Of a stretch of 64,000 bases of DNA, positions 27,460 through 63,290 are shown one piece after another. The stretch lies in the IMG/VR virus record IMGVR_UViG_3300020438_000007, positions 166,740 through 230,739 of that record; one strand, written 5' to 3'. The notes below the pieces were generated by a model, which was not told the origin of the DNA, did not search any database, and worked only from the letters and a program-made list of their open reading frames with translations. A program made the position numbers and the translations under genes. The first letter of the stretch is position 1. Each line of letters opens with the position of its first letter.

Positions 27460-27750
27460 GGGGGCAGAGCCCCCACAGTCACTTGGTTAACAAGGAGTGA
27501 CTAATCCCCGATTGCCCCTTAAGCAGCGACGAGTTCGTCAGTGCGGGCAAATTCTCTTGTAAGAATACGAGAGAACGCTACGATGTTATTCGCAGCAGTG
27601 TCAGATGTTTTTGCATCTATGGTTTGCTCTCCGAGCAGGTTTTCAGTCATGTTCCGTATACCCTGTCGAGACCATGGCATCCCCTTGAATGGAGATGAGG
27701 GGAATCGAACCCCTGTCCAGAATGTCGATTACACCACCTACATGTCTTTT
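27460..27750 (-). ncRNA. ssrA: permuted two-piece tmRNA (cyanobacterial type), tag ANNIVAFSRILTREFARTDELVAA*
   Basis: Acceptor piece T-arm AGGGG-TTCGATT-CCCCT + CATCTCC-A (27690-27697); 5-nt spacer TTCAA; 5' strand GGGGATG (27684-27678) giving G3:U70; tag ORF 27593..27519; terminal hairpin GGGGGC-TCT-GCCCCC 27460-27474; 5' boundary approximate. Confidence 0.93.
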
Positions 27751-27767
27751 TGAGTCATACATCAGGA

Positions 27768-58373: not shown

Positions 58374-58657
58374 AAATTTCTTCTCCTCTGAATTGTGATT
58401 TACATAACGAAGTTTTTCAGCATCACTTCATTTTGTCCGTCCTAATTCTACCAGTATTTATAGAGCAATTCCCGATTTTTGTGTTGAAGTTCACACACTG
58501 TAATGGCGTATTTTTACCCACGCATTAATACTTACCTTCCTTTATATACATCATAATCAAGAAGGCCGCACTGGTGGCAACCGTTATCGACAATGCAATG
58601 ATTGCCGTATGTACTATGTTCACAAAATTTACTTAACATAACGTAATATTTATACCA

Positions 58658-58828
58658 TCAATCATCTTCCGTGTATGCTGATGGATTTTTCCTGAGAAAT
58701 TGCTTGCAATGTCCATGAACATCTATCTCCTGTTCCAAGTGTGCCTTAGTATGCACAACTTCAATGAATCCTATAATTAATAGTAAAAACACTGGTGCAA
58801 ACCAGAGTGGATTAGAAAGTATTTTCAT
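58658..58828 (-). CDS. 56-aa TM + His-rich peptide (IEVVHTKAHL...DVHGHC)
   Basis: Manually translated. Confidence 0.6.
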   Translation of the reverse strand: MKILSNPLWFAPVFLLLIIGFIEVVHTKAHLEQEIDVHGHCKQFLRKNPSAYTEDD

Positions 58829-58832
58829 TCAT

Positions 58833-58862
58833 AAAAAAAAACCTCTACAATATGTAGAGGTT
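58833..58862 (-). terminator. intrinsic terminator after the DUF4278 gene
   Basis: AACCTCTACA-T-ATTGTAGAGGT hairpin followed by a U-run. Confidence 0.8.
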
Positions 58863-58892: not shown

Positions 58893-59036
58893 TCAGCTCT
58901 TAGATGCGAACTTGCGTTCCACCTTGACACCACGATACATTAGATCGTGACGTTGCTTCTTAGCAGCTTCTTCGAGTACCTTTGCATTGTACTCGGCAGA
59001 GTCATAAGAGACTCCTCTGTATGTGACTTGTGCCAT
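58893..59036 (-). CDS. DUF4278-family peptide (47 aa)
   Basis: MAQVTYRGVSY...LMYRGVKV (repeated L.YRG motif); AGGAG SD at 59045-59049. Confidence 0.85.
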   Translation of the reverse strand: MAQVTYRGVSYDSAEYNAKVLEEAAKKQRHDLMYRGVKVERKFASKS

Positions 59037-59073
59037 CGGTTTTACTCCTGTAAGTAGTAGGGGGGTTTTAAAT

Positions 59074-59257
59074 CCCGTTCCTTCAGTCGTCATTTGCGTC
59101 CCAGCACCCAGGCGTTGACTCTTGCATAACAAGAATCAGTTCCGCCTTCTCGTTCTCACTTAACGTGTTGTTCCTAAGTATTCGATCAGTAATGTCGAAT
59201 GCTTGAGAACACTCAAGTGAAGTATAGAGTAACAAGAGAGGTATCATGGGATGAACG
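59074..59257 (-). promoter_or_regulatory. glutamine-II (Downstream-peptide) riboswitch copy 2, with a ~150-nt ORF-bearing insertion in P2
   Basis: CGTTCATCCCA...TGGGACGCAAATGACGACTGAAGGAACGGG upstream of DUF4278. Confidence 0.75.
59083..59247 (-). CDS. 54-aa ORF nested in the riboswitch (MIPLLLLYTSLECSQ...STPGCWDANDD)
   Basis: Manually translated, 55 codons, no internal stop; two Cys; hydrophobic N-terminus. Confidence 0.65.
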   Translation of the reverse strand: MIPLLLLYTSLECSQAFDITDRILRNNTLSENEKAELILVMQESTPGCWDANDD

Positions 59258-59259
59258 AT

Positions 59260-59321
59260 CCGTTCCGTGTCGGCTTACTTGCGTCCCCTCATTCTGCCAA
59301 AGGCAACTTGGGGGATGAACG
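59260..59321 (-). promoter_or_regulatory. glutamine-II (Downstream-peptide) riboswitch copy 1
   Basis: CGTTCATCCCC...GGGGACGCAAGTAAGCCGACACGGAACGG. Confidence 0.75.
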
Positions 59322-59330
59322 TGTGTGTTA

Positions 59331-59359
59331 ATTATAACACAATGCAATTATTTATGCAA
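59331..59359 (-). promoter_or_regulatory. sigma70 promoter TTGCAT-17-TATAAT with an overlapping late TAAATA
   Basis: Hexamers 59354-59359 and 59331-59336; TAAATA 59349-59354. Confidence 0.8.
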
Positions 59360-59395
59360 GTTTTTTGCAGCAATAGCGTGTGTATTGTTACAATT

Positions 59396-60931
59396 TTATG
59401 AAGATTTAACATTGTCACCTAGTACTAGAGTGTCTAGACCAGTCTCATAAAATAGTTCCAAGGCATCCCCAAACCTTCCAGCTATGGGTTTACCACCATT
59501 ATTTAGGGAAGTATTGAGCAAGACAGGTGATCCAGTCAACTTCTCAAACTCCTGTAGTAGACTGTAATAATCTTCTTGAGATTCATTTACTGTGTTGATT
59601 CTACATGTACCATCTACATGTGTGATTGTAGGATATCTGTCTGGTTCTAACACATCAGTCACATATAACATGTATGGACTGGGACCATTCCAGTAGAAAT
59701 TTTCACTTACCTTCTCTTCTAAAACAGAGGCACCGAATGGTCTGAATGGTTCTCTATGTTTAACCTTATTATTAATAAAGTCTTTCCCATGAGGATCAAA
59801 AGGATTCATAAGTATACTTCTATTACCTAATGCTCTAGGACCTATCTCACCATGTCCTTGATACCAACCAACAATCTCACCCTTGGCGAGTCTTTCTGCG
59901 GTCTCCTTGATAGTTTTGGTAGAAGGTCTATCAATAGGAGCCTGATCATCTTGCATAAAGGGGAATCCTTCTGTGGGGAGTGGCATCATATTGTGTTCCC
60001 TTCTTAGAAACTCTATTGCACCAAGACTCAATCCCTGATCGTATGCGTGTGGTGGTATAACAAGATTAGGTATGGCATCTTTCAATACCTTATTAATAAT
60101 AGTATTCTGTGCCACACCACCAGAGTACCCAACAATATCATCTGGTTTAACAAACTCTAGAAAATGTTTTAGATATATCTGTTCTGTATATTCATGTGCT
60201 GTATGAATATAATCCATGATGTATTGTTGATCGTGAAGATTATGATCTATTACATCAAAATTCCATAGTTTTTCTAGATCATCTATACCAATACCCTTAG
60301 CAGATATATCTGGATCATGTTTACCAAACGCTTTCAGAGCCATGATCTTCCCTGCCTGATCTAGGTAATGACCACCCATCTGTAAGGCAGCACCCATCCT
60401 AGTCATAATGAATCCAAGACTAGGAGAACCCTGTTGACTTGGAAATATACCTACTGTCTTGCCATGATCTATAAGTTTATCATCTCTCCATACACTACGA
60501 TACATCCAATCATCACCGAATCCATCAAAGACGAAGTGAAGATTGGGTTTGACCTTCATAGGCCAGAAACTTAATGTATGTGCATAGTGATGATCTATCC
60601 TGTGAATAGGGCATCTAAATCCTAAGTCTTTGAAAAAAGGTATATCTACTACTTCTGATATCTCTTGGGAATTTATAGAGAAGGATGTATGTACGACACC
60701 CATCCTTTCATATTCAGTTCCAGCACAGTCCATGATGATGCAGACACCATCAATAAACCAAGGTTGGATATTCCAATCCTCAAGTATTCTTGTCCATTGA
60801 TATACTCCGTTCTCAAAACCTACATGCTTACATTGATAGTCTCTTTCAAAAGATCTATATCTGACAGTCTCTCCGTCATAGTAAGTTACGTTTGCGTCAT
60901 GAGAGTCTAGTCTTAGACCTAATAATTTCAT
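59396..60931 (-). CDS. carbamoyltransferase (NodU/CmcH/TobZ family)
   Basis: HD.N, DHHYAH, DG.GD, GK.MAL, SGGVAQN, EIGPRALGNRSIL, REPFRPF, HVDGT.R, LLNTSLN. Confidence 0.95.
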   Translation of the reverse strand: MKLLGLRLDSHDANVTYYDGETVRYRSFERDYQCKHVGFENGVYQWTRILEDWNIQPWFIDGVCIIMDCAGTEYERMGVVHTSFSINSQEISEVVDIPFFKDLGFRCPIHRIDHHYAHTLSFWPMKVKPNLHFVFDGFGDDWMYRSVWRDDKLIDHGKTVGIFPSQQGSPSLGFIMTRMGAALQMGGHYLDQAGKIMALKAFGKHDPDISAKGIGIDDLEKLWNFDVIDHNLHDQQYIMDYIHTAHEYTEQIYLKHFLEFVKPDDIVGYSGGVAQNTIINKVLKDAIPNLVIPPHAYDQGLSLGAIEFLRREHNMMPLPTEGFPFMQDDQAPIDRPSTKTIKETAERLAKGEIVGWYQGHGEIGPRALGNRSILMNPFDPHGKDFINNKVKHREPFRPFGASVLEEKVSENFYWNGPSPYMLYVTDVLEPDRYPTITHVDGTCRINTVNESQEDYYSLLQEFEKLTGSPVLLNTSLNNGGKPIAGRFGDALELFYETGLDTLVLGDNVKSS

Positions 60932-62977: not shown

Positions 62978-63061
62978 TGGGAGAAGAGGGACTCGAACCC
63001 TCACGACATTTCTGCCAACAGATTTTAAGTCTGGTGTGTCTACCGATTCCACCACACTCCC
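62978..63061 (-). tRNA. tRNA-Leu(UAA)
   Basis: Cloverleaf with long variable arm, loop CT-TAA-AA, GGTTCGAGTCC; CCA not encoded. Confidence 0.93.
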
Positions 63062-63064
63062 GAA

Positions 63065-63138
63065 CGACTCAAGTAGGACTCGAACCTACGACCGACTGCT
63101 TAGAAGGCAGTTGCTCTATCCATCTGAGCTATTGAGTC
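63065..63138 (-). tRNA. tRNA-Arg(UCU)
   Basis: ACTGC-CT-TCT-AA-GCAGT anticodon arm; 7-bp acceptor stem. Confidence 0.95.
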
Positions 63139-63141
63139 TGG

Positions 63142-63215
63142 AGCCACTTGTCGGACTTGAACCGACGACCTACGCATTACAAATGCGTTGCTCTATCCAG
63201 CTGAGCTAAAGTGGC
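63142..63215 (-). tRNA. tRNA-Thr(UGU)
   Basis: ACGCA-TT-TGT-AA-TGCGT anticodon arm; U73. Confidence 0.95.
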
Positions 63216-63218
63216 GAA

Positions 63219-63290
63219 TAGGACTACCGAGAATTGAACTCGGTTCACACCGTTATAAGCAGTGGGCATTAACCAATATGCGATAGTCCC
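63219..63290 (-). tRNA. tRNA-Ile(UAU)
   Basis: CACTG-CT-TAT-AA-CGGTG anticodon arm; A73; T-loop GTTCAAT. Confidence 0.88.

What the first reader, a model, noticed from the sequence alone, without database searches (positions are those of the whole stretch)
59074..59359. Tandem glutamine-II riboswitches controlling a phage DUF4278 gene
Seen: promoter, then two consecutive CGUUCAUCCC...GGGACGCAA...GAC...GGAACGG units 2 nt apart, then SD and the DUF4278 ORF, then a terminator. Established: Downstream-peptide RNAs bind L-glutamine and typically precede DUF4278 genes in marine cyanobacteria. Inference: the phage senses host nitrogen status, with tandem aptamers sharpening the response; both host-type and late promoters feed the unit.
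Basis: partly seen in the sequence, partly recalled or inferred. Interest (0 to 1): 0.68.

Follow-up and report, generated by a model that had tools for sequence, protein, structure and literature searches.

The report
Glutamine riboswitch with a gene inside
A marine cyanophage carries two adjacent glutamine-sensing RNA switches ahead of a small nitrogen-regulator-like gene, and the second switch is split in two by a real 54-codon gene sitting inside one of its stem-loops, a layout that recurs in many cyanophages and that standard riboswitch searches cannot see.

Summary
The motifs are real and lie on the minus strand. Each half-motif occurs exactly twice in 64 kb, against about 0 expected. 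Unit 1 (59321-59260) is a compact glutamine aptamer, but it scores only 25 bits, below Rfam's thresholds. Unit 2 starts 2 nt later but is not contiguous. Its 5' half (59257-59248) and 3' half (59103-59075) are separated by a conserved 54-codon ORF (59247-59083). The ORF's AUG lies in the P1 stem and its UGA lies in the aptamer core.

In 87 distinct cyanophage loci the P1 pairs across the ORF are kept and covary. In 81 of 87 the ORF keeps the same start and stop register. Codon statistics, two invariant Cys and a confident fold say it is translated. Native ORF sequences favour closure of the long-range stem.

A DUF4278 (IF17-like) ORF with a Shine-Dalgarno (59036-58893) and a terminator follow. 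Metatranscriptome contigs span the whole cassette.

A hairpin between the two aptamers shows a compensatory change, which suggests hierarchical switching. The "glutamine-II" label is not supported: there is no P2 pseudoknot hairpin. Glutamine binding and the switching logic are inferred. About a quarter of first-position aptamers in relatives also hold a nested ORF.

The parts
59350..59357 (-). Late-promoter-like CATAAATA inside cTTGCATAAATA. This is the likely start signal of the cassette.
   Evidence: Read from the sequence. The same cTTGAC(T)AAATA block precedes aptamer 1 in about 130 distinct phage loci. The true TSS was not determined. RNA contigs reach 59362-59366.
59324..59341 (-). 5' hairpin: 7-bp arms TGTGTTA/TAACACA with loop TAAT, which contains most of the 'TATAAT'. 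It ends 2 nt before aptamer 1.
   Evidence: An inverted repeat with covarying arms in 130 loci. Stem mode is 7 bp against 4-5 in shuffles, and the stem ends 0-3 nt before CGTTC in most loci (82 of 130).
59260..59321 (-). Aptamer 1, compact. Closing helix 59321-59317 with 59265-59261. P1 59315-59311 with 59288-59284. Distal extension 59306-59302 with 59298-59294. Linker GACGCAAGTAAG.. and the final G at 59260.
   Evidence: Rfam sub-threshold hits covering the full model: 25.1 and 25.2 bits, E 7.5e-4 and 5.6e-3 in 901 nt. Motif counts. Helices recovered under constraint folding.
59253..59265 (-). Inter-aptamer switch hairpin. GAACG (3' closing strand of aptamer 1) pairs with CGTTC (5' closing strand of aptamer 2), with loop GAT. 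It is mutually exclusive with both closing helices and ends 5 nt before the ORF54 AUG.
   Evidence: Junction table: GAACG/CGTTC 122 times and CAACG/CGTTG 4 times. The loop is 3 or 4 nt in 123 of 127. In the four 3'-half-sampled variants both strands are changed, never one alone.
59248..59257 (-). Aptamer 2, 5' half: closing strand CGTTC, then A, then P1 5' strand TCCC.
   Evidence: It pairs with 59103-59099 and 59080-59076 in the MFE or constrained folds.
59083..59247 (-). Nested ORF of 54 aa (phrog_504) inside the P1 loop of aptamer 2. The A of its ATG is the last P1 pair. Its final codons W-D-A-N-D-D and its TGA stop (59085-59083) are encoded by the aptamer core.
   Evidence: ORF listing. 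It is annotated as a gene in S-SSM7, ACG-2014b, S-SSM4, P-TIM40 and S-RIM12. In 81 of 87 loci an ATG lies in frame with the core stop. 76-sequence family with 2 invariant Cys. AF2 pLDDT 83.9, a helical hairpin. Asp codons are GAT 158 / GAC 40 in the body and GAC 164 / GAT 0 in the core.
59075..59103 (-). Aptamer 2, 3' half: P1 3' strand TGGGA, linker CGCAAATGACGACTGAAG, closing strand GAACG (59080-59076) and linchpin G (59075).
   Evidence: Long-range P1 and closing helix are 96.6% paired across 87 loci, against 36-61% when slid. There are 24 double-change cells against 7.0 +/- 2.2 in shuffles.
59037..59076 (-). Expression platform of DUF4278. A small helix GGG (59076-59074) with CCC (59065-59063) overlaps the closing helix and the linchpin G. 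Then come a pyrimidine-rich tract, AGGAG at 59049-59045 and an 8-nt spacer.
   Evidence: Folds and alignment of 64 platforms. Relatives carry an explicit anti-SD directly after GGAACG: CUCUUUA with UAAGGAG, or CCUAAA with UUUAGG.
58893..59036 (-). DUF4278 ORF, 47 aa, with two YRG motifs. It is IF17-like (phrog_5049).
   Evidence: Pfam PF14105 at 28.7 bits, cut-off 25.3. PHROG hit at E 2.4e-23. The literature links DUF4278 to the GS-inactivating factor IF17.
58840..58862 (-). Intrinsic terminator: 10-bp stem, 3-nt loop and a U run.

Best explanation
This is a small, self-contained cyanomyovirus cassette made of these parts in order: promoter, 5' hairpin, glutamine aptamer 1, glutamine aptamer 2, a DUF4278 (IF17-like) gene and a terminator.

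Both aptamers are minimal glutamine-riboswitch cores. Each has a closing helix CGUUC/GAACG, a P1 hairpin, a conserved linker and a linchpin G. Neither has the P3 of type I or the P2 pseudoknot hairpin of type II.

Aptamer 2 is split. A translated 54-codon gene is nested in its P1 loop. The start codon is in the P1 stem and the stop codon is in the ligand-binding core. The aptamer can therefore assemble only by a 150-nt long-range pairing, and only when no ribosome is on the nested gene.

Most likely logic (inferred):
- At low glutamine the 3' closing strand of aptamer 1 pairs with the 5' closing strand of aptamer 2. This inter-aptamer hairpin hides the nested gene's initiation region and stops aptamer 2 from closing.
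- Glutamine bound to aptamer 1 frees that strand. Ribosomes can then start on the nested gene while the rest of the RNA is still being transcribed.
- Once that stretch is ribosome-free, the structured ORF zips up as an extended P1 arm.
- Aptamer 2 then closes with a second glutamine. The linchpin pair melts the short helix attached to the closing helix, and the DUF4278 ribosome site opens. This is an ON switch, as in cyanobacterial gifB.
- The DUF4278 protein then probably damps host glutamine synthetase.
For: Shown:
- Motif uniqueness in the window and the genome.
- Sub-threshold but full-length Rfam alignment of unit 1.
- A natural compact counterpart of unit 2, in P-TIM68, reaches the RF01739 gathering score: 35.4 against 35.
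- The same split layout occurs in 5 isolate genera and in 87 distinct IMG/VR loci. P1 pairs 0-3 are 100% paired and covary: CG 66 / UA 13 / UG 8 and CG 53 / UA 13 / AU 13 / UG 8.
- An independent count: 96.6% paired against 36-61% when slid, and 0 of 500 shuffles reach the covariation.
- The ORF is coding. The start and stop register is kept in 81 of 87. Codon entropy runs 3>1>2 and pN/pS is below 1. The family has 76 members with 2 invariant Cys. AF2 pLDDT is 83.9.
- Coding and RNA constraints overlap. Synonymous sites are frozen in the core and the reading frame is the same in 81 of 81.
- ORF sequence favours aptamer closure. P1 probability is 0.75 against 0.38 with codon-shuffled interiors (72 of 81, p = 3e-13). 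The MFE z-score is -4.1.
- The inter-aptamer hairpin has a 3-4 nt loop in 123 of 127 junctions. Four variants sampled by the 3' half alone carry the double change CAACG/CGUUG and none a single change.
- A helix attached to the closing strand, or an explicit anti-SD, is found across relatives.
- RNA-library contigs at 100% identity span 59362-58896, with no depth on either flank in 4 runs from 4 studies.

From the literature:
- Glutamine riboswitches are translational ON switches for DUF4278/IF17 genes. Ligand binding melts a helix attached to P1 that pairs with the RBS (PMC6212724; PMC6698751).
- A glutamine-II aptamer cut into two RNA strands still assembles.
Against: - No ligand-binding or expression data exist for these phage variants.
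- Both units in the window fail Rfam gathering scores. Unit 2 is not detected at all.
- Thermodynamic modelling of four constrained states shows no change in accessibility of the DUF4278 Shine-Dalgarno (0.41-0.44). The platform mechanism is therefore not demonstrated.
- No consensus platform structure was found by RNAalifold.
- The nested ORF has no Shine-Dalgarno. Its start region is mostly paired in the full-length fold (0.2-0.27 unpaired), so its translation has to be argued from comparative evidence only.
- The inter-aptamer covariation rests on 4 contigs that may represent only 2-3 lineages.
- Most loci were collected with a pattern that required the tandem junction, and sequences are phylogenetically related. 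Counts therefore overstate the number of independent events.
- Contigs cannot show RNA ends or strand, and DNA carry-over cannot be excluded.
Confidence: 0.6

Rival explanations
1. One reading: two ordinary compact glutamine-II riboswitches in tandem that jointly sharpen control of the DUF4278 gene only.
For: Tandem glnA-type RNAs are known (PMC2864571). Compact tandem versions without an ORF do exist in relatives such as P-TIM68 and in 27 IMG/VR loci.
Against: In this window the halves of unit 2 are 144 nt apart and enclose a conserved coding ORF. No P2 pseudoknot hairpin is present. Scores on the type I and type II models are equal.
Confidence: 0.07
2. The halves of unit 2 never assemble in the cell. 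The 5' half serves only as the switch strand (expression platform) of aptamer 1, which controls the nested ORF. The 3' half acts separately, for example as a decoy, as a ribosome-pausing element, or paired with the 5' strand of aptamer 1.
For: The inter-aptamer hairpin is conserved and shows a compensatory change. Ribosomes on the ORF would keep the halves apart. All four closing strands are interchangeable in sequence.
Against: P1 pairs covary across the ORF. ORF interiors are biased towards allowing closure. The 3' half keeps every core nucleotide of a complete aptamer, and compact relatives have the same sequence joined by a tetraloop.
Confidence: 0.15
3. Translational coupling model. Glutamine acts mainly at aptamer 1. 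Ribosomes finishing the nested ORF at the UGA inside the aptamer-2 core unfold the region and hand over to the DUF4278 start 46 nt downstream. DUF4278 output then follows ORF54 translation rather than a second glutamine-binding event.
For: The stop codon is fixed in the core in 87 of 87 nested loci. The same arrangement, with stop UAA in the linker or in the P1 3' strand, occurs for ORFs nested in first-position aptamers, about 30 nt before the next AUG. The full-length fold hides the region.
Against: Compact loci lacking the ORF keep the same aptamer 2 and platform, so aptamer 2 must work without any upstream translation. Its glutamine-contacting nucleotides are fully conserved.
Confidence: 0.15
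4. The 165-nt insert is a non-coding structured extension of P1, and the open frame is incidental.
For: The insert is strongly structured (z = -4.1). There is no Shine-Dalgarno before its AUG.
Against: The frame is kept open with a fixed start and stop in 81 of 87 diverged loci. Third-position variation dominates. Indels come in whole codons. There are two invariant Cys, and the predicted fold is confident.
Confidence: 0.03

Closest known systems
Glutamine riboswitch type I (glnA RNA, Rfam RF01739)
   Same: It has the closing helix CGUUC/GAACG and the P1-equivalent hairpin (P2 in type I naming). The conserved linker ACG(C/G)AAGUA and ..GAAGGAACG are present. It is associated with DUF4278/IF17-like genes, and tandem copies are known. 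A compact phage relative reaches the gathering score.
   Different: There is no P3 hairpin or three-way junction. Only 6-9 nt lie where P3 should be. Units in this window score 25 bits or are undetected. One aptamer has a protein-coding gene inside its stem-loop.
Glutamine riboswitch type II (Downstream-peptide motif, Rfam RF01704)
   Same: It has the same ligand-binding core, the CGCA form of the linker, a downstream DUF4278 peptide with YRG motifs, and a marine picocyanobacterial setting.
   Different: The defining pseudoknot topology is absent. In type II, GGAACG sits in the loop of a 3' P2 hairpin. Here the helix is a plain closing helix.
Tandem riboswitches (glycine; tandem glnA RNAs)
   Same: Two aptamers for the same ligand lie 2 nt apart on one mRNA. 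Earlier work associates this arrangement with a steeper response.
   Different: The aptamers share a switch hairpin built from their own closing strands. The second aptamer encloses a gene, so the two may control different ORFs in sequence.
ORFs carried inside structured RNAs (homing-endonuclease ORFs in group I intron loops; HEARO RNA with an ORF)
   Same: A coding sequence is tolerated in a peripheral loop of a functional RNA fold. Translation and RNA folding are expected to compete. The group I intron case is my own knowledge. The HEARO case is annotated 'contains an ORF' in PMC2864571 supplements.
   Different: Here the host RNA is a metabolite-sensing aptamer. The ORF is tiny, and its start and stop codons are part of the aptamer's own helices and core.
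Leader-peptide attenuation
   Same: Ribosome position on a short ORF decides which of several alternative RNA pairings forms (my own knowledge).
   Different: No terminator lies between the elements. The ORF product is a conserved folded protein rather than a sensor peptide, and a ligand-binding aptamer is involved.

Membership tests
Glutamine riboswitch (shared core of RF01739/RF01704) | 5' CGUUC pairs with 3' GAACG to form the ligand-binding helix (P1 in type I, PK in type II) | tested here: met
   Both units have it. It is invariant in 87 of 87 split units.
Glutamine riboswitch (shared core of RF01739/RF01704) | An adjacent hairpin (UCCC../..GGGA) supported by covariation | tested here: met
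   Unit 1 forms a local hairpin. In unit 2 the pairing is long-range, 100% paired at pairs 0-3, with CG/UA/UG/AU exchanges.
Glutamine riboswitch (shared core of RF01739/RF01704) | A conserved linker ACG(C/G)A and a long-range linchpin C-G pair to the G that follows GAACG | tested here: met
   GACGCAA and GGAACGG are present in both units. The role of these nucleotides is taken from PMC6698751. The pairing itself cannot be tested here.
Glutamine riboswitch (shared core of RF01739/RF01704) | Reaches the curated Rfam gathering score | tested here: not met
   Unit 1 scores 25.1 and 25.2 bits against GA 33 and 35. Unit 2 gives no hit at E up to 10. The compact homologue in P-TIM68 scores 35.4 against 35.
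Glutamine riboswitch (shared core of RF01739/RF01704) | Selective binding of L-glutamine with a structural change | not testable with these tools
   This needs in-line probing or ITC.
Glutamine-II (Downstream-peptide, RF01704) | A 3' P2 hairpin whose loop carries GGAACG, forming a pseudoknot | tested here: not met
   The Rfam alignment of unit 1 leaves P2 largely gapped or non-canonical. The flanks of GGAACGG in both units are not complementary.
Glutamine-I (glnA RNA, RF01739) | A three-way junction with a P3 hairpin and an E-loop between AAGUA and GAAGGAACG | tested here: not met
   Only 9 nt (unit 1) or 6-9 nt (relatives) lie in place of P3, too few for a hairpin. Unit 2 keeps GAAGGAACG and unit 1 keeps AAGUA, but neither has both.
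Glutamine riboswitch regulon | Located in the 5' leader of a DUF4278 / IF17-like gene | tested here: met
   PF14105 scores above its cut-off. The association is documented in PMC6212724.
DUF4278 / IF17-like GS-inactivating factor | Binds and inhibits glutamine synthetase | not tested
   Only domain membership is shown. Klahn et al. note that short marine homologues lack the C-terminal GS-interaction region.

The most novel reading that the evidence does not exclude
Cyanomyoviruses have evolved 'gene-in-aptamer' riboswitches. A small protein gene occupies the P1 loop of a glutamine aptamer, with its start codon in the stem and its stop codon in the ligand-binding core. Ligand sensing and translation of the nested gene are therefore mutually exclusive on one RNA. 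The switch reads both glutamine and ribosome traffic, and it orders the expression of up to three small proteins: nested ORF in aptamer 1, nested ORF in aptamer 2, then DUF4278. The layout is frequent: 87 of 114 second aptamers and 30 of 112 first aptamers sampled. It is invisible to covariance-model annotation, so phage riboswitch use has been badly undercounted.
Probability: 0.45. Interest if true: 0.9.

Novelty: new variant of a known kind. Interest (0 to 1): 0.8.

Why it matters
1. I know of no riboswitch aptamer that carries a conserved protein-coding gene inside one of its own stems. Five full-text searches found no description. It would be a compact way to couple metabolite sensing to translation status, and a natural example of overlapping RNA-structure and protein constraints.

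2. A survey of riboswitch distribution found only two glutamine aptamers in cyanophages and concluded that phages rarely use riboswitches (PMC5473149). Here 157 phage records match this locus. Most are below Rfam thresholds or split.

3. The type-B (second-position) 3' half, and so the split second aptamer, was found only on phage-like contigs among 401 picocyanobacterial genomes searched. The cassette is strongly represented in marine metatranscriptomes. This points to a phage-specific way of reading host nitrogen status during infection.

4. It gives two unknown small-protein families (phrog_504 and the first-position family) a defined regulatory context to test.

Tried and rejected
- The word-index protein search with the nested ORF returned no candidate.
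- The search for related loci with an alignment of nested ORFs failed, because no block was conserved enough.
- The single genome-contig scan used a pattern that was too loose. It says nothing about absence in hosts.
- The family-level genome search gave 3 hits. One was chance, inside a gene. Two were on phage-like contigs.
- RNAalifold on 64 expression platforms gave no consensus structure.
- Constraint folding of four ligand states gave no difference in Shine-Dalgarno accessibility.
- Foldseek of the ORF54 model against the PDB gave nothing below E = 2.
- The ESM Atlas gave only viral hypothetical clusters.
- A PDB sequence search with the DUF4278 protein gave nothing.
- Complex prediction of the phage DUF4278 protein with two copies of a host glutamine synthetase returned 'no answer'. 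This is neither support nor evidence against.
- Ames and Breaker 2011 is not held in the library.
- A broad supplement search of Weinberg 2010 added nothing on nested ORFs.
- The big exhaustive protein search was not used, since the claim does not rest on it.
- I considered an NtcA or CRP-type operator for the palindrome over the 'TATAAT'. I rejected it because the arms covary freely among phages.
Full report
**What is in the window.**
The feature lies on the minus strand of a 230,739-bp, 39% G+C virus genome. Its closest isolates at this locus are S-SSM7-like cyanomyoviruses, at 79.5% identity. Reading 5' to 3' on the minus strand:
- The stop of a carbamoyltransferase gene lies at 59396.
- The block cTTGCATAAATA follows, with CATAAATA at 59357-59350.
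- A perfect 7-bp inverted repeat lies at 59341-59324.
- Aptamer 1 lies at 59321-59260, followed by two bases.
- The 5' half of aptamer 2 lies at 59257-59248.
- An ATG at 59247 opens a 54-codon ORF. Its TGA is at 59085-59083.
- The 3' half of aptamer 2 lies at 59103-59075.
- A short G/C helix, a pyrimidine tract and AGGAG (59049-59045) follow.
- The 47-codon DUF4278 ORF lies at 59036-58893.
- A 10-bp terminator hairpin with a U run lies at 58862-58840.

Each half-motif occurs exactly twice in the 64-kb window, against 0.05 and 0.00 expected. They occur nowhere else in the genome.

Rfam at gathering thresholds reports no glutamine riboswitch in the window. A relaxed search finds only unit 1. It scores 25.1 bits on RF01704 and 25.2 bits on RF01739, with every model position aligned but both scores below threshold. 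Unit 2 cannot be seen, because 144 nt separate its halves.

**The split aptamer is conserved.**
S-SSM7, ACG-2014b, S-SSM4, P-TIM40 and S-RIM12 show the same order. Aptamer 1 comes first. One to three bases later comes CGTTCATCC(C/T) followed at once by ATG. An annotated hypothetical ORF of 53-60 codons follows. Then come GGGACGCA..GACT(G/A)AAGGAACGG and the DUF4278 gene. P-TIM68 has the same two aptamers in compact form, without the ORF.

After removing duplicates there are 87 distinct split second aptamers, with halves 140-200 nt apart, and 27 compact ones.

Across the 87 split units:
- The five closing-helix pairs and the first two P1 pairs never vary.
- The next P1 pairs are always paired but change identity: CG 66 / UA 13 / UG 8, then CG 53 / UA 13 / AU 13 / UG 8. 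The fifth pair is 93% paired.
- The mean contiguous helix is 6.0 bp, against 4.51 +/- 0.13 when 5' and 3' strands are re-dealt among loci.

The independent pair counter on a MAFFT alignment of the 87 units agrees. It gives 96.6% of cells paired against 36-61% with slid partners. It gives 24 double-change cells against 7.0 +/- 2.2. None of 500 shuffles reaches the covariation score.

**The insert is a gene.**
- In 81 of 87 loci an ATG lies 9-16 nt after the first C of CGTTC, in frame with a U(G/A)A at one fixed position of the aptamer linker (ACU|GAAGGAACG). The ORFs are 49-66 codons long.
- The six exceptions mostly stop a few bases earlier, in the P1 3' strand.
- Column entropy by codon position is highest at position 3 and lowest at position 2. 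In the 53-codon group the values are 1.00, 0.47 and 1.36. Uncorrected pN/pS is 0.35-0.93.
- The 76 distinct products align as one family (phrog_504). It has two invariant cysteines, a hydrophobic N-terminus and a C-terminus (W)DA(N/K/H)(A)D.
- AlphaFold2 with this alignment gives a confident helical hairpin: pLDDT 83.9, helices 13-25 and 31-44.
- No function could be assigned.

**RNA and protein constraints overlap.**
The last five or six codons are the aptamer core, read in the same frame in 81 of 81 loci. Asp is GAT 158 times and GAC 40 times in the ORF body. In the core it is GAC 164 times and never GAT. The first core Ala is GCA 81 of 81 times. Compact aptamers without any ORF have the same core sequence, so it is the RNA that fixes these codons.

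**The ORF sequence is shaped to let the aptamer close.**
The isolated unit 2 of the window folds with its ends together. The coding region forms a long irregular extension of P1, with MFE -59.1 kcal/mol and z = -4.1. Over 81 loci the predicted probability of the four long-range P1 pairs is 0.75 with native interiors. It is 0.38 with codon-shuffled interiors. The native value is higher in 72 of 81 loci (Wilcoxon p = 3e-13).

**The two aptamers are coupled by a hairpin made of their own closing strands.**
GAACG of aptamer 1 and CGUUC of aptamer 2 are complementary. They are separated by 3 nt (80 loci) or 4 nt (43 loci) out of 127. A sample drawn by the 3' half alone, so not biased by the junction sequence, holds four contigs with CAACG and CGUUG. 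Both strands have changed in each of them. This double change keeps the inter-aptamer hairpin while breaking the fifth pair of both closing helices.

The hairpin is mutually exclusive with both aptamers. It ends 5 nt before the nested ORF's AUG. I read it as the expression platform of aptamer 1 and, at the same time, as a lock on aptamer 2. This is an inference. The covariation rests on few lineages.

**The DUF4278 platform.**
Directly after GAACG, the G that should form the long-range linchpin pair begins a short local helix (positions named in PMC6698751). In the window this is GGG 59076-59074 with CCC 59065-59063.
- In relatives the arms covary: GGGAU/GUCUC, GGGGU/ACCUC, GGGU/ACCC and GGA/UCC.
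- In two classes the strand next to the aptamer pairs directly with the Shine-Dalgarno: CUCUUUA with UAAGGAG, and CCUAAA with UUUAGG.
- In local folds the linchpin position is paired with probability 0.84, against 0.57 with shuffled spacers.

This fits the mechanism proposed for cyanobacterial gifB. [quoted passage not shown] My constraint folding of the window's RNA did not reproduce a change in Shine-Dalgarno accessibility. This step remains an analogy.

**Expression.**
Six RNA runs from four studies hold the stretch.
- In one metatranscriptome a 467-nt contig matches 59362-58896 without a difference.
- In another, a 363-nt contig matches 59366-59004.
- In all four RNA runs laid, there is no depth over 59380-59800 or over 58632-58850.
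- A third contig comes from a relative with a compact aptamer 2, with 19 nt between the halves.

The cassette therefore appears in RNA libraries as one unit, and far more strongly than its neighbours. Contigs cannot prove RNA ends, and DNA carry-over cannot be excluded.

**Class assignment.**
Both units have the shared glutamine-binding core but neither accessory helix.
- There is no 3' P2 hairpin enclosing GGAACG, which is the defining pseudoknot of type II.
- There is no room for P3 of type I.
- Scores on the two models are equal.
- The only relative that reaches a gathering score does so on the type I model.

The first-position and second-position aptamers have distinct linker consensus sequences: GCAAGUAAG..C..CGGAACGG against GCAAA(..)CGACU(G/A)AAGGAACGG. 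The second type is almost always found behind a first-type aptamer. About 74 of 80 listed loci found by the 3' half alone were already in the tandem set.

**Distribution.**
157 phage records in the isolate collection match the locus. The cassette sits in different neighbourhoods: after a carbamoyltransferase here, and between nrdB and talC in others.

Among 401 genomes of the picocyanobacterial family searched, the second-type 3' half was found in three. One is a chance match inside a gene. One is on a 7-kb contig of a single-cell assembly. One has cyanomyovirus neighbours such as phoH, ssb, an exonuclease and td. So it was not found in host chromosomes among those searched. That is not proof of absence.

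**A wider pattern noticed on the way.**
Of 112 distinct first-position aptamers, 30 are also split. Their 5' half lies 195-240 nt upstream. They hold a different nested ORF family of about 62-70 codons, again with two conserved Cys. Its stop lies in the P1 3' strand or is the UAA of the linker AAGUAAG, read G-R-K-stop. Some phages therefore carry two genes-in-aptamers followed by DUF4278. In this window aptamer 1 is compact.

**Promoter question.**
The consensus scan lists no sigma-70 site on this strand. The -35 matches only 3 of 6, although TGnTATAAT is perfect. In 130 loci the 'TATAAT' region is the loop of an inverted repeat whose arms covary freely. The stem mode is 7 bp, against 4-5 in shuffles. 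The conserved element upstream of it is cTTGAC(T)AAATA. That element contains the late-type CTAAATA/CATAAATA motif; this is my own recollection of cyanophage late promoters and was not tested. A transcript from that element would begin with a protective 5' hairpin abutting aptamer 1. The RNA contigs reach still further upstream. The start site is therefore open, and 'both host-type and late promoters' is not established.

**Literature.**
The following are already known:
- Glutamine riboswitches, their tandem occurrence, their ON-switch control of DUF4278/IF17 genes, and their presence in some phages.
- A survey that found only two glutamine aptamers in cyanophages and inferred that phages rarely use riboswitches.
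- That the type II aptamer can be cut into two strands and still assemble with ligand. This makes a split natural aptamer plausible.

I found no description of an ORF nested in a riboswitch aptamer. The library is incomplete, and Ames and Breaker 2011 could not be read.

**Limits.**
No step touching ligand binding, translation or protein function could be tested. The DUF4278-glutamine synthetase complex job gave no verdict and is not used as evidence. Related sequences inflate the counts. The read-laying run used 1,301 letters.

Noticed in passing
window 27460-27762 (-): A cyanobacterial-type, two-piece (permuted) tmRNA gene is encoded by the phage. It scores 109 bits on RF01851 (GA 70) and 85.8 bits on RF04321. 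A paper on marine phages notes that phages with both a tmRNA and a glutamine riboswitch are rare (PMC9004378).
   Followed up: no
window 62978-63290 (-): A cluster of four tRNA genes lies head to tail, 3 nt apart.
   Followed up: no
window 59324-59341 (-); about 130 related loci: A hairpin with freely covarying 7-bp arms sits 0-3 nt upstream of aptamer 1 in most loci. Its loop carries the TATAAT-like hexamer, so this hexamer may not be a -10 box.
   Followed up: partly
window about 59368-59392 (-); L009, L010, L012 and many other loci: A second conserved inverted repeat (tgtatca..tacaa type) followed by an A run lies just upstream of the cTTGAC(T)AAATA block. Both long RNA contigs end about 5-10 nt downstream of it, in the A run, at 59362 and 59366. 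It may mark the cassette boundary or a processing site.
   Followed up: no
L017, L020, L030, L038, L042, L044, L062, L264, L274, L279, L284 and 19 more loci: First-position glutamine aptamers are also split. They hold a different nested ORF family of about 62-70 aa with two Cys. Its stop lies in the P1 3' strand or in the linker UAA.
   Followed up: partly
L266, L267, L272, L273: These junction variants carry GCAACGG and CGTTGATCC. Both changes occur together, which keeps the inter-aptamer hairpin at the cost of one pair in each closing helix.
   Followed up: yes
L107:2089-2329: In this variant the nested ORF has its own AGGAGG Shine-Dalgarno inside the P1 loop, and the ATG lies 12 nt further in. 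This is direct support that the insert is meant to be translated.
   Followed up: no
L039, L067, L086, L136: A further short ORF (MNTLT..) lies between aptamer 2 and a divergent Cys-rich DUF4278-like ORF. The cassette can therefore grow downstream as well.
   Followed up: no
L005:1066-1260 (P-TIM40): A manA RNA (141.7 bits) lies directly downstream of the cassette and upstream of talC. No manA RNA was found in this window at gathering score.
   Followed up: no
window 58658-58828 (-): A 56-aa ORF with a hydrophobic N-terminal stretch lies next downstream. It has no Pfam hit. A terminator-like hairpin lies inside it at 58805-58792.
   Followed up: no
window 59258-59254 with 59091-59087 (-): In the unconstrained fold the 5' closing strand of aptamer 2 (UCGUU) pairs with GACGA in its own linker instead of with GAACG. 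The linker motif AACGA/GACGA is conserved in second-position aptamers and could act as a built-in decoy.
   Followed up: no
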